64,000 nucleotides of DNA from Macrostomum hystrix. Its lineage: Eukaryota; Animalia; Platyhelminthes. A model generated the notes under the pieces. It searched no databases. It worked only from the letters and a program-made list of their open reading frames with translations, and was not told the DNA's origin. Each line of letters opens with the position of its first letter. Positions within the stretch are counted from its first letter, which is position 1. Both the position numbers and the translations under genes were made by a program. The stretch spans positions 855,895-919,894 of the forward strand of contig CATNEN010000013.1 in the NCBI GenBank assembly GCA_950097015.1, read 5' to 3'. This document shows, one piece after another, positions 8,701-56,500 of this stretch.

Positions 8701-9661
8701 TTCGCGTCGGTACTGGAGATTTCATACGGTGATTTCCCCTTTCTTCCCCATATATTTCCCCTTATTCCTTCGGTTTCGCGAAAACTGAAAAAGGACAGCA
8801 AAGTAAATCAGGCCGCTTTTATCCGCTTCTCATCTTTCTACTCTCCGGTTGTCCTCAGCTGCTCCCCCTGACACGCCGGCCAGTTTTCACGCGGTTGTTT
8901 ATTAACTTTTTTTTCTACAGCTGGCCAGAGTCAAGAGGCGGAGCGAGGATGGGGATGAAACGAAGAGTGGCTGCCCGCTCACCGCATCCCATAAATCACA
9001 ATGAGCTGGCTGCTTAGTCGCTTCCCACACGGGGCGAAACTGAGGGGGGGGCCACAGCAACGGTAACAGCAGCAGCAGCTGAAATCCCCTTTGCCGATTT
9101 CCTCTTTTCTCCCTCGGGCACACCGATAGGGATGGGGATGGGGAAACGAATCAGAATCAGATTTTCTATCTCCCCAGTCTCTGATTGATGGCAAGCCGCC
9201 GCCGTTGCGAGGGTCCTTGGGAGCACCTGGCGGCGAGGAGGGATAATCCTCACCTTCCATTCTCCTCCCCTCCAATCAGTCGGGCGGAATCAAACAGGGA
9301 GATCCAGGGGCATATAAAGCAGACTCGGGGATCTTAAGGTGAAGTGGGGACTGATTGATGCCGAGTTGAGCAGTCAAATCGCATGTTTTACAGATTTAGT
9401 CAACCGGTGGACGAGAAGTTTTGTTATTGGTTGATTTGCTTCCAGCAAACAAAGACTTTTGAGCACCTGGGCGCTTCAGTCAGGCGAGACAACACCATTC
9501 AAGTTGTGAGTTCGGTGACACAAGAGCCAGGTTTGACACTGATTGGCTGGGAATCAAACATCGGAAATAATTGATCAATCTTTGAGCACCATATATTTAT
9601 GCGGTAAAGAAAGATAGTGTTCAAAAACTAGCTTCGAACGAACAATCAGTGAGGTCACCAT

Positions 9662-17480: not shown

Positions 17481-18018
17481 CCCCAATGGGGAAAATAGCT
17501 CACCTTCGCTAGCCAGCCGGCGTGTCAGCCAGCGAACATCAGCGGGCAGCAGGGACCAGTCGGACTTCCTGGCTGCGTCTCGCTGACGAGTTAGTTGAAC
17601 AGCCAGCATGGCGACGAAGTTTGTGCGGCTGATACGACCGCTGGCTGTAAAATGATTGGTTGCGTGATAGACCATGGACTCTAGCGAGACTGCATAGCAA
17701 CCAAAATGAGGTTTTACCTACCTCGATCTGCAAACAGGCCTATCCATTCAGATGGTCTGTCATGGCAGCCGTCAAAGCCGAGCTTCGAGAACGCGTCAGC
17801 AAGACCTTCTGGCTGAAGCTGATTACGACCGGGCAAGCTTCGAAACACAGATTCTGCAACTAAAGTTAAAATAATTATAATCGTCTCAGATTAGTATGAT
17901 TACTAACTAATTCAGATTATCCAGCAAAGACTGACCGCTAAGCCATTCCTCTGAAATGGGACATTCGTCAATTAGAAGATCCTGAAATTATTGCATGCTG
18001 CATTGTGAAATCTACTGA

Positions 18019-37604: not shown

Positions 37605-39830
37605 AAATGACTCAAATAATCCTCAAATGACTCTCCTGATCCTCAAATGACTCTCCTGATCCTCAAATGACTCTCCTGATCCTCAAATGACTCTCCTGAT
37701 CCTCAAATGACTCTCCTGATCCTCAAATGACTCTCCTGATCCTCAAATGACTATCATGATGCTCAAATGACACCCCATGATCCTCAAATGACTCTCCTGA
37801 TACTCAAATGACTCTCCTGATACTCAAATGACTCTCCTGATCCTCAAATGACTCTCCTGATCCTCAAATGACTATCATGATCCTCAAATGACTCTCCTGA
37901 TCCTCAAATGACTATCATGATGCTCAAATGACACCCCATGATCCTCAAATGACTCTCCTGATACTCAAATGACTCTCCTGATACTCAAATGACTCTCCTG
38001 ATCCTTAAATGACTCTCCTGATCCTCAAATGACTCTCCTGATCCTCAAATGACTATCATGATGCTCAAATGACACCCCATGATCCTCAAATGACTCTCCT
38101 GATACTCAAATGACTCTCCTGATACTCAAATGACTCTCCTGATCCTCAAATGACTCTCCTGATCCTCAAATGACTATCATGATCCTCAAATGACTCTCCT
38201 GATCCTCAAATGACTCTCCTGATACTCAAATGACTCTCCTGATACTCAAATGACTCTCCTGATCCTCAAATGACTCTCCTGATCCTCAAATGACTATCAT
38301 GATGCTCAAATGACACCCCATGATCCTCAAATGATTCTCCTGATACTCAAATGACTCTCCTGATACTCAAATGACTCTCCTGATCCTCAAATGACTCTCC
38401 TGATCCTCAAATGACTATCATGATCCTCAAATGACTCTCCTGATCCTCAAATGACTCTCCTGATACTCAAATGACTCTCCTGATCCTCAAATGACTCTCC
38501 TGATCCTCAAATGACTATCATGATGCTCAAATGACACCCCATGATCCTCAAATGACTCTCCTGATACTCAAATGACTCTCCTGATACTCAAATGACTCTC
38601 CTGATCCTCAAATGACTCTCCTGATCCTCAAATGACTATCATGATGCTCAAATGACACCCCATGATCCTCAAATGACTCTCCTGATACTCAAATGACTCT
38701 CCTGATACTCAAATGACTCTCCTGATCCTCAAATGACTCTCCTGATCCTCAAATGACTATCATGATCCTCAAATGACTCTCCTGATCCTCAAATGACTAT
38801 CATGATGCTCAAATGACACCCCATGATCCTCAAATTACTCTCCTGATCCTTAAATGACTCTCCTGATCCTCAAATGACTCTCCTGATACTCAAATGACTC
38901 TCCTGATACTCAAATGACTCTCCTGATCCTCAAATGACTCTCCTGATCCTCAAATGACTATCATGATCCTCAAATTACTCTCCTGATCCTTAAATGACTC
39001 TCCTGATCCTTAAATGACTCTCCTGATCCTTAAATGACTGTCACAATCCTCAAATGACGCTCATCATCCTCAAATTATTAAAATAATAATTCTCCTAATC
39101 CTTCCATGATCATCAAATGACTTTCACAATCCTTAAATGTCCCCTATGATCCTCAAATGCATATCATGATACTTAAATGACTCTCTTGATCCTTAAATGA
39201 CTGTCACAATCCTCAAATAACTCTCCTGATCCTTAAATGACTCTACTGGTCCTCAAATGACTCAAATGACTCAAATGATCCTCAAATGACTCAAATGATC
39301 CTCAAATGACTCTAATGATCCTCAAATGACTCAAATGATCCTCAAATGACTCTAATGATCCTCAAATGACTCAAATTATCCTCAAATGACTCTAATGATC
39401 CTCAAATGACTCTAATGATCCTCAAATGACTCAAATGATCCTCAAATGACTCTAATGATCCTCAAATGACTCAAATGATCCTCAAATGACTCTAATGATC
39501 CTCAAATGACTCAAATGATCCTCAAATGACTTCCGTCATCCTTAAATGACTCAAATGATCCTCAAATGATCCTCAAATGATCCTCAAATGATCCTCAAAT
39601 GATCCTCAAATGATCCTGAAATGATCCTCAAATGACTCAAATGATCCTCAAATGACTCAAATGATCCTCAAATGACTCAAATGATCCTCAAATGACTCCC
39701 GTCATCCTCAAATGACTCAAATGATCCTCAAATGACTCCCGTCATCCTCAAATGACTCAAATGATCCTCAAATGACTTCCGTCATCCTCAAATGACTCCC
39801 ATGATTGCAAAATGAGTCCCATGATCCTAA
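37605..39830. repeat. 20-bp minisatellite (GATCCTCAAATGACTCTCCT) with variant subdomains
   Basis: Direct periodicity; unit variants change toward 39250-39800. Confidence 0.95.
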
Positions 39831-41058
39831 AATGAATTTAAGTTACTGTTTTTTTAAATAGTTTTTAACTAGTACGACACCTGTTTTTAAACTAAAAGTA
39901 ACTAGATAATTACTATTTAACATAATAAATGATGGTTCACTCAAATTTCATTTTTTGATCACGCAAGACTTTCAATTGATCATTTTGTTTGTCTGTTGTC
40001 AAACGCGAGCCTGGCACCCGCACAAACATCAAAGGGTTTGTCTTCCGTTTTTTCTCTCTAAAGTTTGACTCTCACTTCAGAATAATTTGATATTAGTCGC
40101 TGACATTTATATAACCCTTCTTTACAACTTGTGCAGATACAAAAAGACACACGCACACAGAGACTCAATTAAGAATTCAAATTATTTAACACGGGTATGG
40201 ACATATTTTTTGTTCTAGAGAATGGTGTCACGCGAAAATACGATACTTAACGGGTCTCAGTGCTATACCTGATCTTTTATATTATATCGCGGGCCATAGC
40301 AACCGTGCACAATATGCCACGGAGACCGAGCTCTGCAAACTCCAAGCGCGCATCTTTGCTGACATTTTCGGAATTTGGGGGAGGCCCCGTACGTATAGCA
40401 ACCAATATTAGCGGATTGGAGCGGAAGTGGAAATGAGATCAGAATTCTAAATCTGGTTGTTAAGATGCGCGTTGAAATTAATAATTAATTTCTTTGATTT
40501 CATCATCATTTCTTTCGGATGCAAAATCTTAGATAGTCAAATTATTATTTTTTTCATCCAAGCCTTATCCCTGAATAAGCAGCTGATCACGCAACACACA
40601 GCTATATGCATATAATACTCACACACATTGATGAGCACCGAATGAGCAACTAGTAACGTTATTAAATTACTCTACAAATTATGGATGTCACTTTGGTCAA
40701 GATAAATTTGTTAGAAAAAACATCTATGCCGCAATGTGAAAAAAGCAGTGGATAATTACTGCGCATACAAATTTGAGTATCAAATTGCTCAACTGTCCCA
40801 TATACGAGTATTATGTTGCGCTTCTTTCGATGAAACAATAATAAGTATATAGTAGTAATTTGACTCAGAAAATAATGATGGAGATTGAATTCTGATAGCA
40901 AACGCATAGTCTCAATAAATAATCATGGCCGATAAAAAAAGATTAATAAAGCTTTATCTTAGGGACAGATGGTGCTCTGTTGATAGAACAAAACCGGTCC
41001 GGCTTTTTTCAGTGCCAAATAAAAGAAAAACTTTATTGGTTTATCTCACGACAGACTG

Positions 41059-41111
41059 GTGTGTGTGAGTGTGTGTGTGAGTGTGTGTGTGAGTGTGTGT
41101 GTGAGTGTGTG
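41059..41111 (+). repeat. (GAGTGTGTGTGT)n 12-mer microsatellite, left flank of the YR element
   Basis: A at 41068, 41080, 41092 and 41104 gives period 12. Confidence 0.95.
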
Positions 41112-42412
41112 CAGATGCATAGCCCACTTATTGGGACTCGCGTATGCATAGTGACCCGTGCTCTTGGGCCGAAATAAGTGTTGGGCCAGGCCCAAGAAGT
41201 GCGTCCAACACTGCCAAAAATTTGGAGCTATTAGGAAAAAAAAATATCCACTGAAACCGCATTTTTTTTGTCCAAAAGAAAAAATTCATTTTTTTCATTT
41301 GCAATTGAAGATTTTTTATTAATCTAATAATAATTGCTGGCCCAATAATGTGAAAACTGATGCAAACAAACGTAACTGACCCAATAGTGTTGTTCGGACA
41401 AAATGCGAATTATGTGCTCTAGCATTTTTGAATCGAATTTTCAAAGCCGCTACTGATAGTAGTATTTTCGAATTCGTTTTAGGCGGCTCGCTTTTAAAAC
41501 TCGCGTTCAATGAGACTGACTCCCCTCTGTATTTCTAATGCACAGTGGCTGTGTGACTAGGAAGTAATGAATGTTACGTTGATTGTGAAACTGTACTTCT
41601 GTCCATAAAAATCCCCGACTGCAACTGAATGTGCAGGTATAGCCTTTTAGTTATTTACAATTTATAACGCTAGTTACAGGATGGAGGGTGGGAGCTTTGT
41701 TTGACGACAGAATGCAAAATCTAGAATATTCATGCGTTCATATTAGAGATTTTAACACAGTTAAAATTATTGTATTATTCGTAGTGCAATGCAAAAGAGC
41801 TATGCGCTTTTAAAGATTTAGTATTTTAGCATTGTCGCATTAGACATTACTAAATTCCCAAATATTTATCTACCAATTTAAAAGAACTTTTAACTAAGAT
41901 TCAAATTCACTTATGGAGTCCAGAAGCTGACTAAACAGAACAGTGAGAACTCATACTCCTAAAATGAAAACATTTTTGCTCAATGAATCAAAGGCATCGA
42001 TTCTACAAGAATCAAATTCCAGATGACAAGTTGTGGCACTATGTATTGCCTATATTTTACTAGCGCGCAGCTCTTAAAGGCTGTCTTCAAAATGCCATCA
42101 GTTTATCACACATGCAGACTTATGCCTATGGATCATTTAAAAGGGCCTCGTGTTCTGGGGTTGTTGTTGTTGACCTGAAAGTGTTGGGACAGCCTATTGG
42201 GGGGCTCTTGCTCTATCCACTGAATTAATCGATAACGCCCCATCTACATTTAATTGGACGCCTTGTTTCACACCCTGTACAATTTCACAAACCCCTAAAA
42301 TCTTTTACCCGTCTGAACCAGTAAGAAATGAACGACATACAAGCCCTACTAAGCCAAAGAGGGTGGACCCCTGTTCTGTCTTTATTAGCCTAAAAAAAAC
42401 TAGTGAAAAGCT

Positions 42413-42540
42413 TTTTAAGTGACTGCTTCGATCCTTAGTATTTTAAGTGACTGCTTCGATCCTTAGTATTTTAAGTGACTGCTTCGATCCTTAGTATTTT
42501 AAGTGACTGCTTCGATCCTTAGTATTTTAAGTGACTGCTT
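42413..42540. repeat. 28-bp repeat x4.5 (TTTTAAGTGACTGCTTCGATCCTTAGTA) ending 9 nt before the YR-gene ATG
   Basis: Direct copies at period 28. Confidence 0.93.
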
Positions 42541-42549
42541 GTCGCCACA

Positions 42550-45500
42550 ATGAGGCGACAAGCGAACAAGAAGGGAAGAAAGAAAAAGAAAGACTCTTCA
42601 GAATCAGAATACCATCCGAACTTTCGCGTGGAAGTAAGGTTCGACAAGAGGCACCCATCTTATGGCCAAACGAATGTTGTATATTTGAAAGACTTGACAT
42701 ACTCGGGCAAGCTGTGCCATGGCACCAGAGTCTCAATGGCTTGGAAAGCGAAGGAGTGGTTCGGTACCGTCACAAATATGTAAGTAGCAAATTACTTTCC
42801 AACATTTGTCTTTCTTTGTTCGCTTAACATTTTGAGACCACTAGCCAAAAGCAATTTTGATTTTCGGAACACTGCTTTGCAGATATGTCGACGTTGATCC
42901 GCTTCCAGCTGGTGCAGTTACCTCGGGACTTCGCACTACACTAACAGGTAGGCGGCGAATAAACTTCTGGAATTCACTGAATCAAAAAGCCTATAGCGTA
43001 TAGATATATTTCACCTAAAAGAGATGCAATATGCTTTATGCAGTTTAGGGAATATGAACGTACTCGAACTTAAATTTGATTTCGTGAAATTTACGGAATA
43101 TAAAACGCGCCTTTATAAAGAGCATCAAGAACTGTACATTTCGATGCAATCCCAATCTACGATCATTACAGCTGAAGAACTTAGTCAAGGCAAAACTCCC
43201 GGCGATTGCTTTGAGGACTATTATATTGGTAAGTAATAAAAGCATTGTCACCAAAATTAAGAAAAAACCCGATTCGATTCGATATTAAAAAACTCACACG
43301 TTACAGAAAAGGAGAAGGAGTACATAAATAAACAACTCAGCGAAAAATCCAGTCAGTCCAAGAGAGAAAACTACGCTGATTCTGAGAGACAAGTCAGCTG
43401 CCTTGATTCGCTTCCTCCTGCAGCTTCACACACTGCCAAACTGGACGATCTCAGCAGCGCCTCCAATCGATCCGCTGATTCTGAGAGACAAGTCAGCTGC
43501 CTTGATTCGCTTCCTCCTGCAGCTTCACAGACTGCCAAACTGGACTATCTCAGCAGCGCCTCAAATCGATCCGCTGATTCTGAGAGACAAGTCAGCTGCC
43601 TTGATTCGCTTCCTCCTGCAGCTTCACACACTGCCAAACTGGACGATGTTAGCAGCGCCTCCGATCGACCTGGTGAGTCCCGCTTGACAATGCCATATGA
43701 ATAAGAGCTAAAACAGACCAATTTCAGCATTGAAATATTAAAAACGCATTTCCTGGAACACTGCTGAAAGACACTAAACAGTCGGCATTTTTCAGCTTAG
43801 AAGACAGGGCATTGTTGGGACATGCAGTTCAAAGTGTGTTCTGATAAAACAGGGCATTTTTAGGACATGCAGAACAAAGTGTGTCGCGATAAAACAGGGC
43901 ATTGTTGGGACATGCAGATCAAAGTGTGTTTCGATTCAACAGGGCATTGTTGGGACACAAGAGATTATGTAAAGTGCATGCAGGAGATAAAAGTGTTCAA
44001 TGTTTTCTCCCTTGTGTGCAGATTCGGTTGCTAAGGAAAAGAAGAAGCGAGGCAGCAGCGGCAACGGCCCTTCGGCTCCAAAGTCTGTCAAATTTGACGA
44101 TGTCAGCGGCGCCTCAAATCGATCCGCTAATTCTGAGAGCGGAAGCGTCGGTGTCGATTCGCTTCCTTCTGCAGCTTCACACACTGCCAAACTGGACGAT
44201 CTCAGCAGCGCCTCCAATCGATCCGCTGATTCTGAGAGACAAGTCAGCTGCATTGATTCGTTTCCTCCTGCAGCTTCACACACTGCCAAACTGGACGATC
44301 TCAGCAGCGCCTCCAATCGATCCGCTGATTATGAGAGACAAGTCAGCTGCCTTGATTCGCTTCCTCCTGCAGCTTCACAGACTGCCAAACTGGACTATCT
44401 CAGCAGCGCCTCAAATCGATCCGCTGATTCTGAGAGACAAGTCAGCTGCCTTGATTCGCTTCCTCCTGCAGCTTCACACACTGCCAAACTGGACGATGTT
44501 AGCAGCGCCTCCGATCGACCTGGTGAGTCCCGCTTGACAATGCCATATGAATAAGAGCTAAAACAGACCAATTTCAGCATTGAAATATTAAAAACGCATT
44601 TCCTGGAACACTGCTGAAAGACACTAAACAGTCGGCATTTTTCAGCTTAGAAGACAGGGCATTGTTGGGACATGCAGTTCAAAGTGTGTTCTGATAAAAC
44701 AGGGCATTTTTAGGACATGCAGAACAAAGTGTGTCGCGATAAAACAGGGCATTGTTGGGACATGCAGATCAAAGTGTGTTTCGATTCAACAGGGCATTGT
44801 TGGGACACAAGAGATTATGTAAAGTGCATGCAGGAGATAAAAGTGTTCAATGTTTTCTCCCTTGTGTGCAGATTCGGTTGCTAAGGAAAAGAAGAAGCGA
44901 GGCAGCAGCGGCAACGGCCCTTCGGCTCCAAAGTCTGTCAAATTTGACGATGTCAGCGGCGCCTCAAATCGATCCGCTAATTCTGAGAGCGGAAGCGTCG
45001 GTGTCGATTCGCTTCCTTCTGCAGCTTCACAGACTGCCAAACTGGACGATCTCAGCAGCGCCTCCAATCGATCCGCTGATTATGAGAGACAAGTCAGCTG
45101 CATTGATTCGTTTCCTCCTGCAGCTTCACACACTGCCAAACTGGACGATCTCAGCAGCGCCTCCAATCGATCCGCTGATTATGAGAGACAAGTCAGCTGC
45201 CTTGATTCGCTTCCTCCTGCAGCTTCACACACTGCCAAACTGGACGATCTCAGCAGCGCCTCCAATCGATCCGCTGATTCTGAGAGACAAGTCAGCTGCC
45301 TTGATTCGCTTCCTCCTGCAGCTTCACACACTGCCAAACTGGACGATGTTAGCAGCGCCTCCGATCGACCTGGTGAGTCCCGCTTGACAATGCCATATGA
45401 ATAAGAGCTAAAACAGACCAATTTTAGCATTGAAATATTAAAAACGCATTTCCTGGAACACTGCTGAAAGACACTAAACAGTCGGCATTTTTCAGCTTAG

Positions 45501-48500
45501 AAGACAGGGCATTGTTGGGACATGCAGTTCAAAGTGTGTTCTGATAAAACAGGGCATTTTTAGGACATGCAGAACAAAGTGTGTCGCGATAAAACAGGGC
45601 ATTGTTGGGACATGCAGATCAAAGTGTGTTTCGATTCAACAGGGCATTGTTGGGACACAAGAGATTATGTAAAGTGCATGCAGGAGATAAAAGTGTTCAA
45701 TGTTTTCTCCCTTGTGTGCAGATTCGGTTGCTAAGGAAAAGAAGAAGCGAGGCAGCAGCGGCAACGGCCCTTCGGCTCCAAAGTCTGTCAAATTTGACGA
45801 TGTCAGCGGCGCCTCAAATCGATCCGCTAATTCTGAGAGCGGAAGCGTCGGTGTCGATTCGCTTCCTTCTGCAGCTTCACAGACTGCCAAACTGGACGAT
45901 CTCAGCAGCGCCTCCAATCGATCCGCTGATTCTGAGAGACAAGTCAGCTGCATTGATTCGTTTCCTCCTGCAGCTTCACACACTGCCAAACTGGACGATG
46001 TTAGCAGCGCCTCCGATCGACCTGGTGAGTCCCGCTTGACAATGCCATATGAATAAGAGCTAAAACAGACCAATTTTAGCATTGAAATATTAAAAACGCA
46101 TTTCCTGGAACACTGCTGAAAGACACTAAACAGTCGGCATTTTTCAGCTTAGAAGACAGGGCATTGTTGGGACATGCAGTTCAAAGTGTGTTCTGATAAA
46201 ACAGGGCATTTTTAGGACATGCAGAACAAAGTGTGTCGCGATAAAACAGGGCATTGTTGGGACATGCAGATCAAAGTGTGTTTCGATTCAACAGGGCATT
46301 GTTGGGACACAAGAGATTATGTAAAGTGCATGCAGGAGATAAAAGTGTTCAATGTTTTCTCCCTTGTGTGCAGATTCGGTTGCTAAGGAAAAGAAGAAGC
46401 GAGGCAGCAGCGGCAACGGCCCTTCGGCTCCAAAGTCTGTCAAATTTGACGATGTCAGCGGCGCCTCAAATCGATCCGCTAATTCTGAGAGCGGAAGCGT
46501 CGGTGTCGATTCGCTTCCTTCTGCAGCTTCACAGACTGCCAAACTGGACGATCTCAGCAGCGCCTCCAATCGATCCGCTGATTCTGAGAGACAAGTCAGC
46601 TGCATTGATTCGTTTCCTCCTGCAGCTTCACACACTGCCAAACTGGACGATCTCAGCAGCGCCTCCAATCGATCCGCTGATTATGAGAGACAAGTCAGCT
46701 GCCTTGATTCGCTTCCTCCTGCAGCTTCACACACTGCCAAACTGGACGATCTCAGCAGCGCCTCCAATCGATCCGCTGATTATGAGAGACAAGTCAGCTG
46801 CCTTGATTCGCTTCCTCCTGCAGCTTCACACACTGCCAAACTGGACGATCTCAGCAGCGCCTCCAATCGATCCGCTGATTCTGAGAGACAAGTCAGCTGC
46901 CTTGATTCGCTTCCTCCTGCAGCTTCACACACTGCCAAACTGGACGATGTTAGCAGCGCCTCCGATCGACCTGGTGAGTCCCGCTTGACAATGCCATATG
47001 AATAAGAGCTAAAACAGACCAATTTTAGCATTGAAATATTAAAAACGCATTTCCTGGAACACTGCTGAAAGACACTAAACAGTCGGCATTTTTCGGCTTA
47101 GAAGACAGGGCATTGTTGGGACATGCAGTTCAAAGTGTGTTCTGATAAAACAGGGCATTTTTAGGACATGCAGAACAAAGTGTGTCGCGATAAAACAGGG
47201 CATTGTTGGGACATGCAGATCAAAGTGTGTTTCGATTCAACAGGGCATTGTTGGGACACAAGAGATTATGTAAAGTGCATGCAGGAGATAAAAGTGTTCA
47301 ATGTTTTCTCCCTTGTGTGCAGATTCGGTTGCTAAGGAAAAGAAGAAGCGAGGCAGCAGCGGCAACGGCCCTTCGGCTCCAAAGTCTGTCAAATTTGACG
47401 ATGTCAGCGGCGCCTCAAATCGATCCGCTAATTCTGAGAGCGGAAGCGTCGGTGTCGATTCGCTTCCTTCTGCAGCTTCACAGACTGCCAAACTGGACGA
47501 TCTCAGCAGCGCCTCCAATCGATCCGCTGATTCTGAGAGACAAGTCAGCTGCATTGATTCGTTTCCTCCTGCAGCTTCACACACTGCCAAACTGGACGAT
47601 CTCAGCAGCGCCTCCGATCGATCCGCTGATTCTGAGAGACAAGTCAGCTGCCTTGATTCGCTTCCTCCTGCAGCTTCACACACTGCCAAACTGGACGATG
47701 TTAGCAGCGCCTCCGATCGACCTGGTGAGTCCCGCTTGACAATGCCATATGAATAAGAGCTAAAACAGACCAATTTCAGCATTGAAATATTAAAAACGCA
47801 TTTCCTGGAACACTGCTGAAAGACACTAAACAGTCGGCATTTTTCAGCTTAGAAGACAGGGCATTGTTGGGACATGCAGTTCAAAGTGTGTTCTGATAAA
47901 ACAGGGCATTTTTAGGACATGCAGAACAAAGTGTGTCGCGATAAAACAGGGCATTGTTGGGACATGCAGATCAAAGTGTGTTTCGATTCAACAGGGCATT
48001 GTTGGGACACAAGAGATTATGTAAAGTGCATGCAGGAGATAAAAGTGTTCAATGTTTTCTCCCTTGTGTGCAGATTCGGTTGCTAAGAAAAAAAAGAAGC
48101 GAGGCAGCAGCGGCAACGGCCCTTTGGCTCCAAAGTCTGTCAAATTTGACGATGTCAGCAGCGCCTCTGATCGATCACCTGAGTTCAGGGGCAACGTCGG
48201 GACAGGCGTGATGTTTGAGAAGTTGTCTTTTGTTGGCCATTCTCAATGTTCTATTGAGGCTGACGCATTTTTGGGCGTGGCAGATGATGCTGCAACGTTT
48301 GCTCTTCTTGAACCAGTTACTGCAACGTTTACTCGAAGTGGATTGTCTTTTGCTGCTGGTTGCGGTGACCCGTATGCTTTGTCACCGTGTGACTCAGCCC
48401 AAGGCCTGGTGGATTCTGACTGTAATCTGGTTAATTGTGAACTAACCGAAGTTCCTGTCGAACATGTTTTACGTGATTTTAGCGATCTATCAATGCCATC

Positions 48501-51373
48501 TCAGCTTGTGAACTATGTTAGTACCGAAGAAGTAAAACATCATGAAAGTAGTCTTCATTCTCATCACGGTGATATGTTTGGCCCTCAGACGACACATGAA
48601 GTTTTACCTGAAGGCGGCTCAACTGTAAGACAAATCGAAGAGAACTCTGAATCTGTAGACTTTGATTTGCCGTGTAAAGCAGAAAAATGTCAACCTAAAG
48701 GCAGTGTAGTTTTGCAGAAGTTTGTTTCCTCGATTACCAAGATCCACCACTGCAAGTATTGTGGCAAAATGTTGACAAAAATCTCGAGACATTATAAAAC
48801 TTCTCACAAGAAGGAATCTGATGTTATGCGCATACTTAAGATGCACAACAAGTCACGCCGAAAGAGGGCGTTTAAAGCTTTAGAAAGTGAAGGCGACTTC
48901 GTTCATAATAGAATAGTGTTAGCAAAGCAAGAGGGAGAACTGATAATTGCTAGGCGGCAAAAGGACGATGAAAACAGTCCGGATGACTTTTTGCCTTGTC
49001 ATACGTGTTTTCAATTCATAAAAAAAGATCTTCTTTACCGACACAAGAATACTTGCTCAGGAAGCCTGCACGATATTCTTGAGGAAGACAGCAATGACAA
49101 TGAAAGTGAGGATTCAATAGACTCTGCGAAGTCAATGCAGGAAAAAGAAAACCGAAGTGTATCGACCAAATACTGCCAGCAGCTGTCACGCCTTCTATTG
49201 TCAAATCCGGCAGCGGGATCGAATCTCTTAGATCCTGAGTCAGAACTCTACAAGACCGTGCTGTCGAAGCTTGCTGCTGACGAGGTTTTTGATGTTATTT
49301 GTACGGAGGATCTTATTCTTCGTCTCGGAGAGCGGTATAGATCAAAGCAGAAGAAGCTTAATCGGCAGCATGTTTCAAGCGTTATCAGAGATGCTGCACG
49401 CATCTTAATCGAGCTTCGGAAAATTCACGGAAATCATAGCTTGAAGCATTTCTTACAGCCACACTTTTTCGACGACTGGATCGACATAATAAGAAAATTA
49501 TCTAAAGATGCACCATCATTTGCACTTCGAGCAGGAAATTTTATTCCTCATCTATGCAACATAGTGATTGGAGACGCCATCCGTAAAGGGGATGATAGTT
49601 TAAAAAAGTCAACGTCCGATTTCCTTACGTTGAAAACCACGGAGTACCATCCACTTGTCACCGCTAAATGCTTGAAAGAACTAAACGATAAAGCATCACG
49701 TCCACAGGACTCAGTGCCTCTGACGGAGGACATCGTCGCCGTCTCTACTTTTATTAAATCCGCAATCGCTAGAACAATTGAGGAGGCAGAAGATGCGCTA
49801 AAATGTAGTAAATCGCCAATGCCTCGTTTGTATCGCGAGCTTGTTTACTTGGTAATGACAAAACTAGCATTTTACAACCGACGTCGCTCAAGCGAGATTT
49901 CTGAATTGGATTTTGATCTTCTAAAGTCCATGCATCAATCCCACACGCATGAGGATTTGCATAAGTACATGTCACCGCTAGAGCAGAAACTGGCTAGCAG
50001 ATTAAAAATTGTCAACATAGCAGGGAAGAAAGGCCGCTCCGTCCCAATACTAATTGAACAGCTTTGCTGGAATGGAATCCTTTGCATTGAAAAGTGCAGA
50101 AAACAGGCCGGAGTCAAGGACAACAACAACTTCGTATTCGCCATTCCGGGCTACGATGAGTCTGTATACCGCTGTTCAGTTGCGATCGACCAAGTTGTAC
50201 GCCTCGGTAACTTGGAGTTGAAGAGACCGGAATTACTACGATCAAGATATTTGAGACGCCACTGCGCTACTGTTTCACAACTGCTTGATTTGACGTCAGC
50301 AGAACTAGACTGGCTTGCACGGCACCTTGGACATGACATAACAGTTCACAGGCAGTACTACAGAATGCACCAAAACACACTTGAGTTGACCAAAGTTTCA
50401 CGAATTCTGGAAATTATGGACAGCGGAAAACTTGGTCACTTTAAGGGCCGAAAACTCGAGGACATTACTTTAGAAGAAATGGACAGTGTGCTACCCATCG
50501 GAGCCGACGAAATCGACGTAGAAGCCTCTGCGTCCGCTGAACAAAGTAAGCAGCCGAAGCGAAGCAGCAGCAACGATTATTCAAACGATTGCTCGCCTTT
50601 AACGGTTGCTAAAGTCAGTCCAAGTCAGTCCAAGAGAGTTGGCCTCAGCAATCAAGGTCCAACGACTGCCCAACATGGCGACAGGTCACCACCGTCCAGC
50701 AAAGAAGACGGCATCACAGACAAGTTTTCCCGGAGAGTTGAAAAGGCAAACGCGAAACATTCAAAGGAAGCTTCGAAGTCAGGTGAGGAGACGATAAAAT
50801 AAAATAAATATCGTAATATATTCAGCTTGAAATCCTATATAAATAGGAGCTAAAGCAGGGCTGATAAACTTTTCGGTGTTAATATTAAAAACGCATTTCC
50901 TGGAACACTCCTGAAACTGAAAGACACTAAACAGTCGGCATCTCTCAGCTTAGAAAACAGGGCATTGTTGGGACATGCAGATCAAAGTGTAATGTGATTG
51001 TATTGAAGAGCACATTGTTAGGATATGCAGACCAAAATGTGTGTTCTCATTGTGTGAACTCCCTGATAGTGTTTTGACGACATAGTGCTAGGTTATGTTA
51101 TTGCTGTATGTATGGTAGGTATGGTATGGTATCTTATTTAAGTTAGATATTGCAGTGTTCCGCATTGCCTCATTACGTGCATATGTCTACTTTCCTTTTT
51201 CAGCAAAGCGGCTCACAGATGAACAGAAGAAGGATATGTGCGAGGCATTCGCTCACTTCATTCAACAAGGCACTCTTCCTGGGAAGAAGGATATTCTGGA
51301 GCTGCGGCCTGATTCGATGGCTAACATTGAATGGAAAAAAAATCAAAGACAATTTGAGGGTAGCAGTGGTTAA
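42550..51373 (+). CDS. Spliced tyrosine-recombinase-domain protein with repeat-exon N-terminal half (11 exons, ~2020 aa)
   Basis: Exons 42550-42779, 42883-42947, 43004-43228, 43307-43672, 44022-44522, 44872-45372, 45722-46024, 46374-46973, 47323-47724, 48074-50782, 51204-51373. All introns are GT-AG with consistent phases (2,1,1,...); 6072 nt in frame; Kozak-like GCCACAATG. Confidence 0.8.
43307..48180 (+). repeat. Tandem exon+intron modules (850, 850, 652, 949, 751 bp) with internal 99-bp (33-aa) repeats
   Basis: Near-identical 349-bp intron repeated five times; module exons of 303/402/501/600 nt differ by multiples of 99 nt. Confidence 0.95.
48074..50782 (+). CDS. Main exon: CxxC-x9-H-x4-H and CxxC-x11-H-x3-C zinc motifs plus tyrosine recombinase catalytic domain
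   Basis: CKYC...RHYKTSH (48751) and CHTC...YRHKNTC (48997). YR motifs: YNRRRSSEI (R, ~49879), GKKGRSVP (K, ~50026), SRYLRRHCAT (~50254), LGHD (50332), HRQYYR (Tyr, 50356-50361). Confidence 0.88.
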
Positions 51374-52379
51374 GGCTCGCAACAATTAGTAAAAGAAGTA
51401 ATTCGGCTTTCTTGCTTTTCGGGACTAATAGTTGCAATTTTCTGAATTAAAAAAAGAGCTATTACTTATCAAATGAGATAAGTTACATGACATCAACAAA
51501 ATGATGCTTCAAACACAGGATATGTGTCGTTTGTATGTAATTTTGTGTAGCAAAGGACTCTGGGTGGACAACATTTGTATCAGAAGGTTTTTTTAAGCTA
51601 GTTTATTGGTCTTGCTGTTACTTTTATATTAGTAGACTCAGTCTGAATATTATTGTTAGTAAGATGCGAGGATTTTAATTCAATGCCCTTTTCACTGCTG
51701 GTACAACAGTACCAATACAAAACAGTACAACAGTAAATTACGGAAGCTCTGTACCTTTTTGGAAAGGAGAAGAAAAAAGATTTACAGCTATTTACATCAG
51801 TAGACACTAGACAATGACCAATAAGGAGTGCGTGCTAGCTTTGCTTTGGGCGGCGGGCGGGTCTAGCTGTCAATATTTGTCATTGTTCTTTTATTTTCAT
51901 TGTAATTTCATTATCCTTTCAATATTGTCTGTTTTTTTCACGCTTTATGCCCAATAATCAATTCATCGTGAACTTATTCAGATATAATCATTTTAATGTT
52001 TTATTAAAAGAAACAGACGAGCATGAGCAGGAAACAATGCCACCTTGCACACACTACTGCTACAGAATGGAATGGATGGCTGGGGAAGGGGCACGGAGCA
52101 GCTGATGGGCTACAGGCACTGCGGCACTTTCGATCCGCTTTAACAAGAAAATAAAGGGAGGGAATTTTCCCCAGCGCGATAAAAAGATTCCTTATTGATT
52201 TAATGCGTGATAAAATAGGATTAGACAAATAGCTACCAGTTTCTATTGCCATGCTACTTTTGAGACTACTGTTGTCTAATCATTTTATCACTAATTAAAT
52301 CAATTAGTATGCTTTTATCGCTTTTCGTGTTTAATCATCAGTGATTTATTATTTTCGTGCTTCTTTGTATGTCTCATCT

Positions 52380-52840
52380 ATTTTATCGCCAGTTAAATCA
52401 ATTATTTCATTTTATTGCTTTCTATGCCTTATCTTCTACTTATCGCAGTTTAATTCAGCAGTTATCATTTTAATCCCTCTTTTAATGTCTAATTATCCAT
52501 TTTATCGCCATTTAAATCAATTATTTCATTTTTATTGCTCTCTATGCCTAATCTTCTACTTATCGCAGTTTAATTCAGCAGTTATCATTTTAATGCCTCT
52601 TTTTTAATGTCTAATTATCCATTTTATCGCCATTTAAATCAATTATTTCATTTTATTGCTTTCTATGCCTAATCTTCTACTTATCGCAGTTTAATTCAGC
52701 AGTTATCATTTTAATGCCTTTTTTTAATGTCTAATTATCCATTTTATCGCCATTTAAATCAATGATTTCATTTTTATTGCTTTCTATGCTTAATCTTCTA
52801 CTTATCGCAGTTTAATTCAGCAGTTATCATTTAAAGCTTT
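52380..52840. repeat. ~120-bp AT-rich tandem repeat x4
   Basis: TTTATCGCCA(G/T)TTAAATCAA starts at 52382, 52501, 52623 and 52743. Confidence 0.92.
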
Positions 52841-53245
52841 TTTTTAAGTCTAAAATTATACGAGTATATTTTCACATTTTTTCATCTTTCATATAACTTC
52901 TAAATATTTGTCAATTCGATAAATAATTATTCACTGGACATTCACAAACATAATTTTTTTAAATATAATTAATTATCGTTTCTTTATATTAAAGTTTGTT
53001 ATATTCCCGCTCAGTTTTTTTCACAATGGACCTTAATCTTTCTTAGTGCAGGACCCATTCGACGCACCAAAAATGCGTATTAGACTTCTATTAGTAAGTG
53101 GAGAGTGCATTTGATCCTAAAATGTTTTAAAACAGTGTTGGACGCATGTGTCGGGACACGTGTGTGTATAATTTTTCGTGTGTCCGTGCAGTCCCTATAA
53201 GTGCCCACTTTTATACAAGTGGCCAATAAATGCCCGGTGCCCGTT

Positions 53246-53338
53246 TGTGTGTGTGAGTGTGTGTGTGAGTGTGTGTGTGAGTGTGTGTGTGAGTGTGTGT
53301 GTGAGTGTGTGTGTGTGTGTGAGTGTGAGTGAGTGTGT
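53246..53338 (+). repeat. (GAGTGTGTGTGT)n 12-mer microsatellite, right flank of the YR element
   Basis: A at 53256, 53268 and 53280 gives period 12; same orientation as 41059-41111. Confidence 0.95.
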
Positions 53339-53596
53339 CGCAAATAGCCATGCATTAATTCGAGTTCCTTGACCACTTAAGTCCTTATAGCCACTGAGTG
53401 AAATATTAGCATACCATGCTAAGGTATAGGATTGAGAGATCATTTATTTATTTGTAACAGTCCATTAGACTTGTGGCTGTTAAACAAATGTTATTGTAAT
53501 GAAGAAAGTTTTTTTATCACTCAGAAAATTCTGGATAAAAAAGGGAAAAAACTACCTTTTTACACGCACTTACAAACAATAACCAGAAAGCATATC

Positions 53597-56500
53597 ATTG
53601 TCCTCTGTCCATCAGTAGCTAATAGGCATCATTCTCCTCTGTCCATCAGTAGCTAATGGGCATCATTCTCCTCTGTCCATCAGTAGCTAATAGGCATCAT
53701 TCTCCTCTGTCCATCAGTAGCTAATAGGCATCATTCTCCTCTGTCCATCAGTAGCTAATAGGCATCATTCTCCTCTGTCCATCTAGCTAATAGGCATCAT
53801 TCTCCTCTGTCCATCAGTAGCTAATAGACATTCTCCTCTGTCCATCAGTAGCTAATAGGCATCATTCTCCTCTGTCCATCAGTAGCTAATAGGCATCATT
53901 CTCCTCTGTCCATCAGTAGCTAATAGGCATCATTCTCCTCTGTCCATCAGTAGCTAATGGACATCATTCTCCTCTGTCCATCAGTAGCTAATAGGCATCA
54001 TTCTCCTCTGTCCATCAGTAGCTAATAGGCATCATTCTCCTCTGTCCATCAGTAGCTAATAGGCATCATTCTCCTCTGTCCATCAGTAGCTAATAGGCAT
54101 CATTCTCCTCTGTCCATCAGTAGCTAATGGGCATCATTCTCCTCTGTCCATCTAGCTAATAGGCATCATTCTCCTCTGTCCATCAGTAGCTAATGGACAT
54201 CATTCTCCTCTGTCCATCAGTAGCTAATAGGCATCATTCTCCTCTGTCCATCAGTAGCTAATAGGCATCATTCTCCTCTGTCCATCTAGCTAATAGGCAT
54301 CATTCTCCTCTGTCCATCAGTAGCTAATAGGCATCATTCTCCTCTGTCCATCAGTAGCTAATAGGCATCATTCTCCTCTGTCCATCAGTAGCTAATAGGC
54401 ATCATTCTCCTCTGTCCATCAGTAGCTAATAGGCATCATTCTCCTCTGTCCATCAGTAGCTAATAGGCATCATTCTCCTCTGTCCATCAGTAGCTAATGG
54501 ACATCATTCTCCTCTGTCCATCAGTAGCTAATAGGCATCATTCTCCTCTGTCCATCAGTAGCTAATAGGCATCATTCTCCTCTGTCCATCAGTAGCTAAT
54601 AGGCATCATTCTCCTCTGTCCATCAGTAGCTAATAGGCATCATTCTCCTCTGTCCATCAGTAGCTAATAGGCATCATTCTCCTCTGTCCATCAGTAGCTA
54701 ATGGACATCATTCTCCTCTGTCCATCAGTAGCTAATGGGCATCATTCTCCTCTGTCCATCTAGCTAATAGGCATCATTTTCCTCTGTCCATCAGTAGCTA
54801 ATAGGCATCATTCTCCTCTGTCCATCAGTAGCTAATAGGCATCATTCTCCTCTGTCCATCAGTAGCTAATAGGCATCATTCTCCTCTGTCCATCAGTAGC
54901 TAATGGACATCATTCTCCTCTGTCCATCAGTAGCTAATGGGCATCATTCTCCTCTGTCCATCTAGCTAATAGGCATCATTCTCCTCTGTCCATCAGTAGC
55001 TAATGGACATCATTCTCCTCTGTCCATCAGTAGCTAATAGGCATCATTCTCCTCTGTCCATCAGTAGCTAATAGGCATCATTCTCCTCTGTCCATCAGTA
55101 GCTAATAGGCATCATTCTCCTCTGTCCATCAGTAGCTAATAGGCATCATTCTCCTCTGTCCATCAGTAGCTAATGGACATCATTCTCCTCTGTCCATCAG
55201 TAGCTAATAGGCATCATTCTCCTCTGTCCATCAGTAGCTAATGGACATCATTCTCCTCTGTCCATCAGTAGCTAATAGGCATCATTCTCCTCTGTCCATC
55301 AGTAGCTAATAGGCATCATTCTCCTCTGTCCATCAGTAGCTAATAGGCATCATTCTCCTCTGTCCATCAGTAGCTAATAGGCATCATTCTCCTCTGTCCA
55401 TCAGTAGCTAATAGGCATCATTCTCCTCTGTCCATCAGTAGCTAATAGGCATCATTCTCCTCTGTCCATCAGTAGCTAATGGACATCATTCTCCTCTGTC
55501 CATCAGTAGCTAATAGGCATCATTCTCCTCTGTCCATCTAGCTAATAGGTATCATTCTCCTCTGTCCATCAGTAGCTAATAGGCATCATTCTCCTCTGTC
55601 CATCAGTAGCTAATAGGCATCATTCTCCTCTGTCCATCAGTAGCTAATAGGCATCATTCTCCTCTGTCCATCAGTAGCTAATAGGCATCATTCTCCTCTG
55701 TCCATCAGTAGCTAATAGGCATCATTCTCCTCTGTCCATCAGTAGCTAATGGGCATCATTCTCCTCTGTCCATCTAGCTAATAGGCATCATTCTCCTCTG
55801 TCCATCAGTAGCTAATAGGGCATCATTCTCCTCTGTCCATCAGTAGCTAATAGGCATCATTCTCCTCTGTCCATCAGTAGCTAATGGGCATCATTCTCCT
55901 CTGTCCATCAGTAGCTAATAGGCATCATTCTCCTCTGTCCATCGTAGCTAATAGGCATCATTCTCCTCTGTCCATCAGTAGCTAATAGGCATCATTCTCC
56001 TCTGTCCATCAGTAGCTAATGGACATCATTCTCCTCTGTCCATCAGTAGCTAATGGGCATCATTCTCCTCTGTCCATCAGTAGCTAATAGGCATCATTCT
56101 CCTCTGTCCATCAGTAGCTAATAGGCATCATTCTCCTCTGTCCATCAGTAGCTAATAGGCATCATTCTCCTCTGTCCGTCAGTAGCTAATAGGCATCATT
56201 CTCCTCTGTCCATCAGTAGCTAATAGGCATCATTCTCCTCTGTCCATCAGTAGCTAATGGGCATCATTCTCCTCTGTCCATCTAGCTAATAGGCATCATT
56301 CTCCTCTGTCCATCAGTAGCTAATAGGCATCATTCTCCTCTGTCCATCAGTAGCTAATAGGCATCATTCTCCTCTGTCCATCTAGCTAATAGGCATCATT
56401 CTCCTCTGTCCATCAGTAGCTAATAGGCATCATTCTCCTCTGTCCATCAGTAGCTAATGGACATCATTCTCCTCTGTCCATCAGTAGCTAATAGGCATCA

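What the first reader, a model, noticed from the sequence alone, without database searches (positions are those of the whole stretch)
41059..53338. Candidate ~12 kb tyrosine-recombinase transposon inserted into a (GT)5GA microsatellite
Seen: the identical 12-mer microsatellite GAGTGTGTGTGT lies in the same orientation at 41059-41111 and 53246-53338. Just inside these arrays are two inverted-repeat pairs in mirrored order: a perfect 14-bp TGCGTCCAACACTG/CAGTGTTGGACGCA and a 13/14 CACTTAT(T/A)GGGACT pair. Extra CACTT/AAGTG motifs occur at both ends, and a spliced gene with a YR domain lies between. Known: eukaryotic YR DNA transposons (Cryptons) have spliced YR genes and lack canonical DDE-type TSDs. 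From memory, the CryptonV group was described as target-site specific; this should be verified. Inference: this is an autonomous or recently active YR element that targets GT-rich microsatellites, with the subterminal inverted motifs as recombinase binding sites.
Basis: partly seen in the sequence, partly recalled or inferred. Interest (0 to 1): 0.9.

Follow-up and report, generated by a model that had tools for sequence, protein, structure and literature searches.

The report
Microsatellite-bounded Crypton tyrosine-recombinase transposon
This is a 12 kb mobile element that carries its own tyrosine recombinase gene and sits between two halves of a GT-type microsatellite; near-identical copies of a sister element in the flatworm Macrostomum lignano lie between (GT)n tracts at several different sites, so it is a real microsatellite-associated transposon of a kind so far recorded only briefly, for cnidarians.

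Summary
Two same-orientation (GT)5GA arrays (41059-41111, 53246-53338) bracket a 12.1 kb unit.

Inside is a spliced gene for a protein of about 967 aa. Its core (residues about 414-775) folds like XerD, XerH and Cre, and R612, K659, R735, H761 and Y770 are conserved in 23-24 of 24 homologues.

The decisive evidence is comparative. The closest homologue (M. lignano, 65% aa identity over the conserved core) is encoded by six loci. These are 99.8% identical over about 14.4 kb and occupy at least five different flanks. Every visible end stops in a (GT)n tract of variable length. Their ends align to the window's ends at 75-83%, although most internal non-coding DNA does not align.

A second M. lignano family is bounded by (TGTC)n with a 25/28 inverted repeat. 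A Capitella relative abuts GT arrays.

The hAT-MITE, host-gene and retroelement readings are rejected. Microsatellite-specific CryptonV elements are cited in the literature (Repbase Reports 2012), so this is a new member of a known kind.

No empty site or circular junction could be obtained. Other first-stage notes record further Crypton-like genes elsewhere in this genome.

The parts
41059..41111 (.). Left (GT)5GA microsatellite half (period 12, 4.4 copies). Proposed crossover and target sequence.
41112..41225 (+). Left inverted arm of about 110 bp. It carries copies of the TTGGGMC motif (41131, 41164, 41181, and 41189 on the minus strand) and the 14-mer at 41200-41213. It aligns to the left end of the M. 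lignano element at 75-77%.
42550..42783 (+). Upstream 77-aa ORF or exon. 42568-42786 is conserved with the M. lignano element (68% aa over 73 residues against L001 4007-4225). No Pfam match. Either a 5' exon or a second small gene.
43374..48009 (+). Higher-order tandem array. Units of about 650-950 bp are built from 99-bp and 45-bp subrepeats. Each unit repeats the first-exon-like ORF start (MFSPLCADSVAK...). The 45-bp subrepeat carries the end motif ATTGTTGGGAC.
48052..50782 (+). Main exon of the recombinase gene. It encodes two zinc-binding motifs (residues about 233-253 and 315-336), a core-binding domain and the catalytic domain with R612, K659, R735, H761 and Y770.
50783..51203 (+). Inferred intron (donor AG|GTGAGG, acceptor tttttcag|). 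The M. lignano gene model has an intron at the same position. It contains one copy of the 45-bp motif unit at 50955-50990.
51204..51373 (+). Last exon, in frame. It encodes the C-terminal module KRLTDEQKK...LPGKKD, which coral, hydrozoan, annelid and fish homologues (P0002, P0018, P0011, P0024) and one homologue from an unnamed metagenome source (P0028) carry downstream of the recombinase domain. The stop codon is at 51371-51373.
52376..52853 (.). Subterminal 120-bp tandem repeat, 4 copies.
53125..53245 (-). Right inverted arm, holding the 14-mer at 53133-53146 and the motif at 53190-53203. It aligns to the right end of the M. lignano element at 80-83%.
53246..53338 (.). Right (GT)5GA microsatellite half (7.8 copies), in the same orientation as the left half.

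Best explanation
Window 41112-53245 is an autonomous Crypton-type DNA transposon, meaning its only enzyme is a tyrosine recombinase. It is integrated in a GT-type microsatellite, whose two parts now flank it as direct repeats.

Proposed mechanism. Recombinase subunits bind the roughly 110-bp inverted arms, which carry iterated GCAYTNNTTGGGAC-like motifs. Recombination between the two flanking GT tracts would excise a circle. In that circle the right arm, one GT tract and the left arm form a lox- or attP-like site, and the donor locus is left with a single GT tract. The GT tract acts as the crossover (overlap) region. Because it is a dinucleotide repeat, any genomic (GT)n offers the identity needed for strand exchange, in any 2-bp register. 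Integration therefore places the element inside a microsatellite without a target-site duplication and leaves GT tracts of variable length on either side.

What is shown: the element boundaries, multicopy status at different sites in the sister family, the conserved arms, the recombinase fold and catalytic residues, and the splice. What is inferred: the circular intermediate, the crossover lying within the GT tract, binding of the motifs by the recombinase, and the way copy number increases.
For: (1) Six M. lignano loci encode the closest homologue. They share about 14.4 kb at 99.8% identity. Every visible end (3 left, 6 right) stops in (GT)n tracts of 14-48 nt, next to unrelated flanks. There are five distinct right flanks and three distinct left flanks.
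(2) The window's ends align to those ends at 75-83%, whereas outside the ORF and one upstream exon nothing else aligns at nucleotide level.
(3) Left and right ends are imperfect inverted copies of each other in both species.
(4) The window has no other GT arrays.
(5) The AlphaFold model gives tyrosine recombinases as the top 19 VIA matches: XerH Z 9.6, XerD 9.5, Cre 8.6, lambda Int 7.1, over residues 414-775. XerD and XerC take 27 of the top 30 Swiss-Prot matches at Foldseek probability 1.00.
(6) R612, K659, R735 and H761 are invariant and Y770 is present in 23 of 24 homologues, with XerD-like spacing.
(7) No reverse transcriptase or other enzyme ORF is present.
(8) A second M. lignano family (L008) is bounded by (TGTC)n on both sides with a 25/28 terminal inverted repeat. 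Capitella copies abut (GT)34 and a GT-rich array, and carry an inverted iterated motif (AATCGAGGAC on the left, GTCCTCAATT on the right).
(9) Literature: some CryptonV families insert specifically in microsatellites (PMC8869645). In Chlamydomonas, Crypton insertion and clean excision at a short sequence shared by terminus and target have been observed directly (PMC9977147).
Against: No empty site and no circle junction was seen. The one read-laying run used short-read contigs, which break at the microsatellite. It is therefore not proven that the GT array existed before insertion rather than being carried by the element. Copy number of the window's own element rests only on contig depth (ORF 217, right end 143, flank 63), which the tool warns is not a copy number. 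The His of the canonical HxxR box is replaced (Arg in Macrostomum, Thr in most homologues), so activity is not guaranteed. In 80 metagenome contigs of the family, same-motif microsatellites on both sides were not found, although the contigs are too short to be informative. The inverted motifs closest to the GT tract lie more than 10 bp from it, unlike a classical 13-8-13 lox site.
Confidence: 0.8

Rival explanations
1. The element is a tyrosine-recombinase transposon, but the GT tracts are its own terminal direct repeats. They would be carried along, or generated and expanded by slippage after insertion. It would then insert without preference for microsatellites.
For: No empty site was observed. 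Right-hand tracts can be as short as 14-16 nt (L003, L006). That is compatible with a short element-borne core that sometimes expands.
Against: Tyrosine-recombinase chemistry needs an identical overlap sequence in both partners, so a GT core in the element implies a GT core in the target. Tract lengths differ independently on the two sides of each copy. In the window both halves share the unusual period-12 (GT)5GA structure, whereas the sister family has pure (GT)n, as expected if one pre-existing array was split. CryptonV is described as microsatellite-specific.
Confidence: 0.13
2. The inverted CAGTGTTGG motifs belong to two independent hAT-like MITEs, each with its own microsatellite, that happen to bracket an unrelated recombinase gene.
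For: Read outwards, the 14-mer begins with CAGTG as some hAT termini do. Its orientation (..CACTG on the left, CAGTG.. on the right) is what two outward-lying MITE ends would give.
Against: No partner ends exist anywhere in the window. In M. lignano the homologous arms, the gene and the tandem arrays move together as one 14.4 kb unit whose similarity stops in the GT tracts, not at the 14-mer. The 14-mer itself is not conserved between species, while the surrounding arm is.
Confidence: 0.02
3. It is a domesticated or segmentally duplicated host gene with a recombinase-derived domain, not a mobile element.
For: Crypton-derived host genes are known (PMC3212892). The N-terminal region is long and disordered and carries nuclear-protein-like features.
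Against: Six 99.8%-identical copies with sharp common boundaries lie in unrelated flanks. The catalytic residues, including the tyrosine, are retained, whereas domesticated DUF3504 domains lack most of them. No DUF3504 match was found.
Confidence: 0.03
4. It is a tyrosine-recombinase retrotransposon (DIRS, Ngaro or PAT type) that has lost, or hides, its reverse transcriptase.
For: It has inverted terminal structures plus internal repeats related to the ends, as DIRS elements have.
Against: There is no RT or RNase H ORF, and no space for one outside the tandem arrays. Protein-level comparison with the sister element shows only the recombinase gene and two short conserved segments. The gene retains an intron in both species, which a retrotransposed copy would be expected to lose.
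Confidence: 0.02

Closest known systems
CryptonV (Repbase group; Kapitonov and Jurka 2012, Repbase Reports 12:2034, as cited in PMC8869645)
   Same: A DNA transposon whose only enzyme is a tyrosine recombinase. An animal host. Some families insert specifically in microsatellites. The window's protein has many cnidarian homologues, for example Acropora at E 1e-79.
   Different: CryptonV was described from cnidarians, and only in a database report that could not be read here, so sequence membership is untested. The present elements are from a genome whose best protein match is a flatworm, from that flatworm itself, and from an annelid. Whether CryptonV has the roughly 110-bp inverted arms, the internal motif arrays and the repeated 5' exons is unknown to me.
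CryptonA / CryptonI animal Cryptons (Kojima and Jurka 2011, PMC3212892)
   Same: An intron-containing recombinase gene, no reverse transcriptase, no target-site duplication, low copy number.
   Different: Those groups are reported to have no terminal repeats (direct or inverted) and no C-terminal domain. This element has inverted arms, flanking direct microsatellite repeats and a C-terminal module. No DUF3504 (PF12012) match in any of 24 family members.
CryptonF-1_cRei of Chlamydomonas reinhardtii (PMC9977147)
   Same: Its observed behaviour fits the model used here: insertion by recombination between a short terminal sequence and a near-identical target, and clean excision that leaves only the target.
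   Different: Its target is a 5-bp motif (CAYCG), not a microsatellite. It belongs to a different Crypton group, in a green alga.
Telomere-repeat-specific tyrosine recombinases of endogenous nimaviruses (PMC10871703)
   Same: A eukaryote-associated recombinase with a C2H2 zinc-binding region that integrates its element into a simple tandem repeat.
   Different: The cargo is a giant viral genome and the target is (TAACC)n. Those authors state that their recombinases are not closely related to Cryptons. No relative of the present family was found in viral contigs.
Bacterial and phage tyrosine recombinases (XerC/D, XerH, Cre, lambda Int)
   Same: The same two-domain fold, with the catalytic Arg, Lys, Arg, His and Tyr at XerD-like spacing. 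The attP x attB logic, in which only the overlap must match.
   Different: 10-16% sequence identity, no Pfam PF00589 hit, an N-terminal extension of about 400 residues with two zinc motifs, and the first His of the HxxR box replaced.

Membership tests
Crypton (tyrosine-recombinase DNA transposon) | Encodes a tyrosine recombinase with the catalytic Arg-(Lys)-His-Arg-(His/Trp)-Tyr set | tested here: met
   The fold matches XerH, XerD and Cre. R612, K659, R735 and H761 are invariant; Y770 is present in 23 of 24 homologues. The HxxR His position is Arg or Thr, so five of six positions are canonical.
Crypton (tyrosine-recombinase DNA transposon) | No reverse transcriptase or DDE transposase; the recombinase is the only enzyme | tested here: met
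   ORF list and Pfam scans of all non-repeat ORFs, and tblastx against the sister element.
Crypton (tyrosine-recombinase DNA transposon) | Multiple copies with common sharp ends at different loci, a short direct repeat at the termini, no target-site duplication | tested here: met
   Met for the M. lignano sister family: six loci, at least five sites, ends in (GT)n. For the window's own element only contig depth suggests more than one copy.
Crypton (tyrosine-recombinase DNA transposon) | Excision as a circle and reintegration by site-specific recombination | not testable with these tools
   Only short-read contigs were available, and they break at the microsatellite.
CryptonV (Repbase) | Copies lie inside microsatellites | tested here: met
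   Window 2 of 2 ends. M. lignano family 1: 9 of 9 visible ends. Family 2: 2 of 2 ends in (TGTC)n. Capitella: 2 of 2 evaluable ends. That the array pre-existed insertion is not shown.
CryptonV (Repbase) | Recombinase sequence groups with the Repbase CryptonV consensus sequences | not testable with these tools
   Repbase sequences and the 2012 report are not held. Only cnidarian homologues at about 30% identity were seen.
CryptonA / CryptonI | No terminal repeats and no C-terminal domain (PMC3212892) | tested here: not met
   Inverted arms of about 110 bp and a conserved C-terminal module.
CryptonA / CryptonI | Recombinase domain of the DUF3504 type | tested here: not met
   No PF12012 hit in any of 24 members at E 0.01.
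DIRS / Ngaro / PAT recombinase retrotransposons | Reverse transcriptase and RNase H ORF | tested here: not met
   An intron is retained.
hAT MITE pair | Each MITE has two inverted termini and 8-bp target-site duplications | tested here: not met
   No partner termini in the window. The arms co-move with the gene in M. lignano.
Starship captain / CryptonF (DUF3435) | PF11917 domain | tested here: not met
   No PF11917 hit. Only a weak language-model resemblance, 0.89.

The most novel reading that the evidence does not exclude
In this animal recombinase family the target may be set simply by the simple-repeat spacer that the circular form carries between its two inverted arms: (GT)n here and in M. 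lignano family 1 and Capitella, (TGTC)n in M. lignano family 2, and possibly (TA)n in an octocoral. Lineages would then retarget to a new microsatellite class by changing the spacer, while the arms and iterated motifs recruit the enzyme. That would make these elements natural spacer-programmable integrases for metazoan genomes. It would also make them a hidden cause of flanking-sequence similarity and instability at microsatellites.
Probability: 0.3. Interest if true: 0.75.

Novelty: new member of a known kind. Interest (0 to 1): 0.5.

Why it matters
Target-specific DNA transposons are rare in eukaryotes. For the microsatellite-specific Cryptons, all that could be found here was a one-line citation of a database report.

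This locus, together with the six M. lignano copies, gives a fully delimited example outside Cnidaria. It has defined ends, inverted arms, an iterated candidate binding motif, a spliced recombinase gene and a clear prediction for the recombination site.

The protein family is very large: 4,466 clusters at E<=1e-30 in a library clustered at 50% identity. It has no Pfam model, so many animal genome annotations probably list these genes as uncharacterised host proteins.

M. lignano is a transgenic laboratory model, so excision, circle formation and retargeting could be tested directly there.

Tried and rejected
Sequence searches of the 916-aa ORF against Pfam and PDB sequences gave nothing meaningful, singly or as a 24-member profile. 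The fold had to be established from a predicted structure.

Exact-protein look-ups for the Acropora and Crassostrea homologues (P0002, P0003, P0014, P0015) were not on record, so coral loci could not be examined. The Clytia locus (L007) has a single (CA)32 about 9.5 kb downstream and is uninformative. The Paramuricea locus lies between (TA)n arrays, but in a TA-rich region that also holds a nested RT gene, so it is inconclusive.

Eighty metagenome contigs of the family are mostly under 10 kb. Only two showed the same repeat on both sides, and that was a coding ATG repeat next to the gene. Several contigs end in microsatellites (ACAG, ACAT, AGGT, AAGT), which is suggestive only. No viral-contig relatives were found.

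I considered recovering an empty homeologous site through the WSC/PAN gene next to L002. I did not pursue it, because it needs a hand-spliced protein sequence rather than a reference.

I did not determine the source organism: the window has no clear host gene, because its long ORFs lie in tandem repeats.
Full report
**1. The observation.**
A period-12 array (unit GTGTGTGTGAGT) lies at 41059-41111, with 4.4 copies and 100% matches. The same unit, on the same strand, lies at 53246-53338, with 7.8 copies and 93% matches.

TGCGTCCAACACTG is at 41200-41213 and its exact reverse complement at 53133-53146. These are the only two matches in 64 kb even at two mismatches, against 0.29 expected. CACTTATTGGGACT is at 41125-41138 and its reverse complement, with one mismatch, at 53190-53203. 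The window holds no other GT-rich array and no other copy of either end.

When the left end is aligned with the reverse complement of the right end, the two pairs turn out to be the best-preserved blocks of one imperfect inverted arm of about 110 bp. Each arm starts directly at the microsatellite.

**2. The gene.**
A 916-codon ORF runs from 48052 to 50802 on the plus strand. It has no Pfam or PDB sequence match, alone or as a profile.

Thirty-two homologues were found. The best is a Macrostomum lignano protein at 65% identity over the conserved core (54% over all 839 aligned residues). The others, at about 26-33%, come from corals, a hydrozoan, an octocoral, an annelid, bivalves, a sea urchin, a fish and beetles.

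A profile of 24 members finds 4,466 clusters at E<=1e-30 among 1.84 billion representatives. This is therefore a very large animal family without a curated model.

An AlphaFold model built from that alignment has a confident core at residues about 220-820. In the VIA second look, the top 19 matches and most of the top 35 are tyrosine recombinases: XerH Z 9.6, XerD 9.5 and 9.3, Cre 8.6, lambda Int 7.1, Tn1549 Int 6.6. The remaining rows in that range are type IB topoisomerases of the same catalytic fold. These matches cover model residues 414-775. Full-length XerD and XerC take 27 of the top 30 Swiss-Prot matches, at Foldseek probability 1.00.

R612, K659, R735 and H761 are invariant in 24 of 24 sequences and Y770 is present in 23 of 24. 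The spacings K659-732-R735-H761-Y770 (73, 3, 26, 9) are close to those of XerD (72, 3, 23, 9, from my own knowledge of XerD numbering). The His of the HxxR box is Arg in Macrostomum and Thr in most others. Two Cys/His zinc motifs precede the core.

**3. Splicing.**
The gene is spliced. An AG|GTGAGG donor at 50782/50783 and a tttttcag| acceptor at 51203/51204 join in frame. They add a 56-residue module (KRLTDEQKK...LPGKKD...) that Acropora, Capitella, Clytia and Solea homologues, and one metagenome-derived homologue, carry downstream of the recombinase domain. The M. lignano gene model uses an intron at the same position.

Contigs of two runs of unrecorded library type cover only the ORF and not the 3' region. 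That looks like RNA, but it is not proof.

**4. The decisive comparison.**
The M. lignano homologue P0001 is encoded at six loci of assembly GCA_002269645.1. These loci share about 14.4 kb at 99.8% identity. They differ mainly in the number of internal tandem units.

In all three loci where the left end is visible, and in all six right ends, similarity stops in a (GT)n tract of 14-48 nt. Beyond the tract the flanks are unrelated. There are three different left flanks and five different right flanks. Two loci share one right flank and are probably alleles or homeologues.

The window's ends 41082-41247 and 53144-53287 align to these ends at 75-83%. The ORF aligns at only 67% nucleotide identity. 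Apart from one upstream exon-like segment (42628-42785), nothing else aligns at nucleotide level; protein-level comparison adds only short patches, the clearest being the last exon.

Ends that are better conserved than the coding region, and that travel with the gene to new sites, are element termini. This rules out the two-MITE reading and the host-gene reading.

**5. The same plan in other family members.**
A second, chromodomain-bearing M. lignano family (P0030, locus L008) lies between (TGTC)n arrays at 8833-8864 and 17651-17873. A 25/28 inverted repeat abuts each array, with further inverted GGACC motifs inside.

In Capitella teleta (L011) one copy ends next to (GT)34, and the next copy begins after a GT-rich array that resembles the window's interrupted array. 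The left end of that second copy carries AATCGAGGAC three times. The right side of each copy carries GTCCTCAATT in a 35-bp tandem array. Its own right end falls in an assembly gap.

An octocoral copy lies between (TA)n arrays, but that case is inconclusive. Metagenome contigs are too short to judge.

**6. Internal anatomy.**
The end motif recurs inside the element, with invariant T-GGGAC in a GCAYTNNTTGGGAC context. In the window it is in the 45-bp subrepeat, 3.4 copies per higher-order unit across 43804-48009, with one more copy in the intron. In M. lignano it occurs twice per 655-bp unit and in a 38-bp x 11.8 array near the right end.

Each higher-order unit in the window also repeats the start of the ORF. 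In M. lignano each unit contains a 240-nt exon used in the gene model.

A 73-residue upstream segment (42568-42786) is 68% identical between the two species and has no Pfam match.

**7. Mechanism.**
This part is inferred, on the basis of established tyrosine-recombinase chemistry and the Crypton model of Goodwin et al. 2003. That model is supported by observed insertions and clean excisions in Chlamydomonas (PMC9977147).

Recombination between the two flanking GT tracts would release a circle. In it the right arm, a GT tract and the left arm form an attP-like site. The GT tract would be the overlap region, so any genomic (GT)n can pair with it in any 2-bp register. That explains three things: the absence of target-site duplications, the variable and independent tract lengths on the two sides, and the fact that in the window both halves share an idiosyncratic period-12 structure while the sister family has pure (GT)n.

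The iterated motifs are the likely binding sites for the recombinase or its zinc-finger or C-terminal modules. The internal arrays may act as accessory sites.

**8. What is known, and novelty.**
Kojima (PMC8869645) states that some CryptonV families insert specifically in microsatellites.

Animal CryptonA and CryptonI are described as lacking terminal repeats and a C-terminal domain (PMC3212892). This element has both, and it has no DUF3504 signature.

I could not compare it with the Repbase sequences. I therefore file it as a Crypton that works like CryptonV and is probably a member of that group. It is a new member of a known kind, from a genome whose closest protein match is a macrostomid flatworm.

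**9. Limits.**
No empty site or circular junction was obtained. The copy number of the window's own element is suggested only by contig depth: 217 over the ORF and 143 at the right end, against 63 in the flank. Variant copies diverge at 48176 and 51439. A second organism in the same study holds a copy with 43 substitutions in 2,772 aligned letters (about 98% identical) and many frameshifting indels.

Noticed in passing
window 43804-48009 and 50955-50990; L001 4928-11278 and 16083-16528: The terminal motif (..ATTNTTGGGAC..) is iterated inside the element in tandem arrays, all on the gene strand. It occurs in the 45-bp subrepeats in the window, twice per 655-bp unit in M. lignano, and in a 38-bp x 11.8 array near the M. 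lignano right end. These may be accessory recombinase-binding arrays.
   Followed up: partly
window 43374-48180; L001 4928-11278: The higher-order tandem units each repeat the start of the recombinase ORF. In M. lignano each 655-bp unit holds a 240-nt exon (80 codons), and the annotated protein contains two of them. Copy number of the units differs between otherwise identical M. lignano copies.
   Followed up: partly
window 48010-51562 (run X2, 'organism B'): A second organism in the same sequencing study holds a copy of the ORF with 43 substitutions in 2,772 aligned letters (about 98% identical). It has many frameshifting deletions (2, 2, 1, 7, 4, 10, 13 nt ...) and no coverage beyond 51562. 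It is either a decayed copy or a sign of recent shared ancestry or transfer.
   Followed up: no
window 48176 and 51439: Contigs from three runs diverge from the window at these two points (loose ends CGCTAATTCTGAGAGCG... and ATTAGACTGGAGTTGTCG...). This indicates at least one structurally different copy of the element in the same genome.
   Followed up: no
L008 8833-17873 (M. lignano NIVC01000850.1): A second Crypton family, whose recombinase carries a chromodomain, lies between (TGTC)n arrays with a 25/28 inverted repeat at the ends. It sits inside the annotated span of a large ankyrin/armadillo host gene, presumably in an intron.
   Followed up: partly
L011 9884-20770 (Capitella teleta KB309003.1): Two copies of a related element lie in tandem, 93-98% identical in their 3' parts. 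They are separated by (GT)34, about 730 bp, and an interrupted GT array. The annotated 1,358-aa 'gene' fuses pieces of both copies.
   Followed up: partly
window 42568-42786; L001 4007-4225: An upstream 73-residue segment is 68% identical between the two species' elements and has no Pfam match. It may be a 5' exon or a separate small gene of the element.
   Followed up: partly
window 38000-39835 and 53594-56000: The insertion site lies between two large minisatellites: a 20-bp unit x 90 on the left and a 34-bp unit x 71 on the right. Much of the window is tandem repeat, with overlapping long ORFs in several frames.
   Followed up: no
protein family (A1 profile): The recombinase family has 15,507 representative clusters at E<=0.001 and 4,466 at E<=1e-30, yet no Pfam model. 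Many members are annotated as fusions with SET, chromo or other domains.
   Followed up: partly
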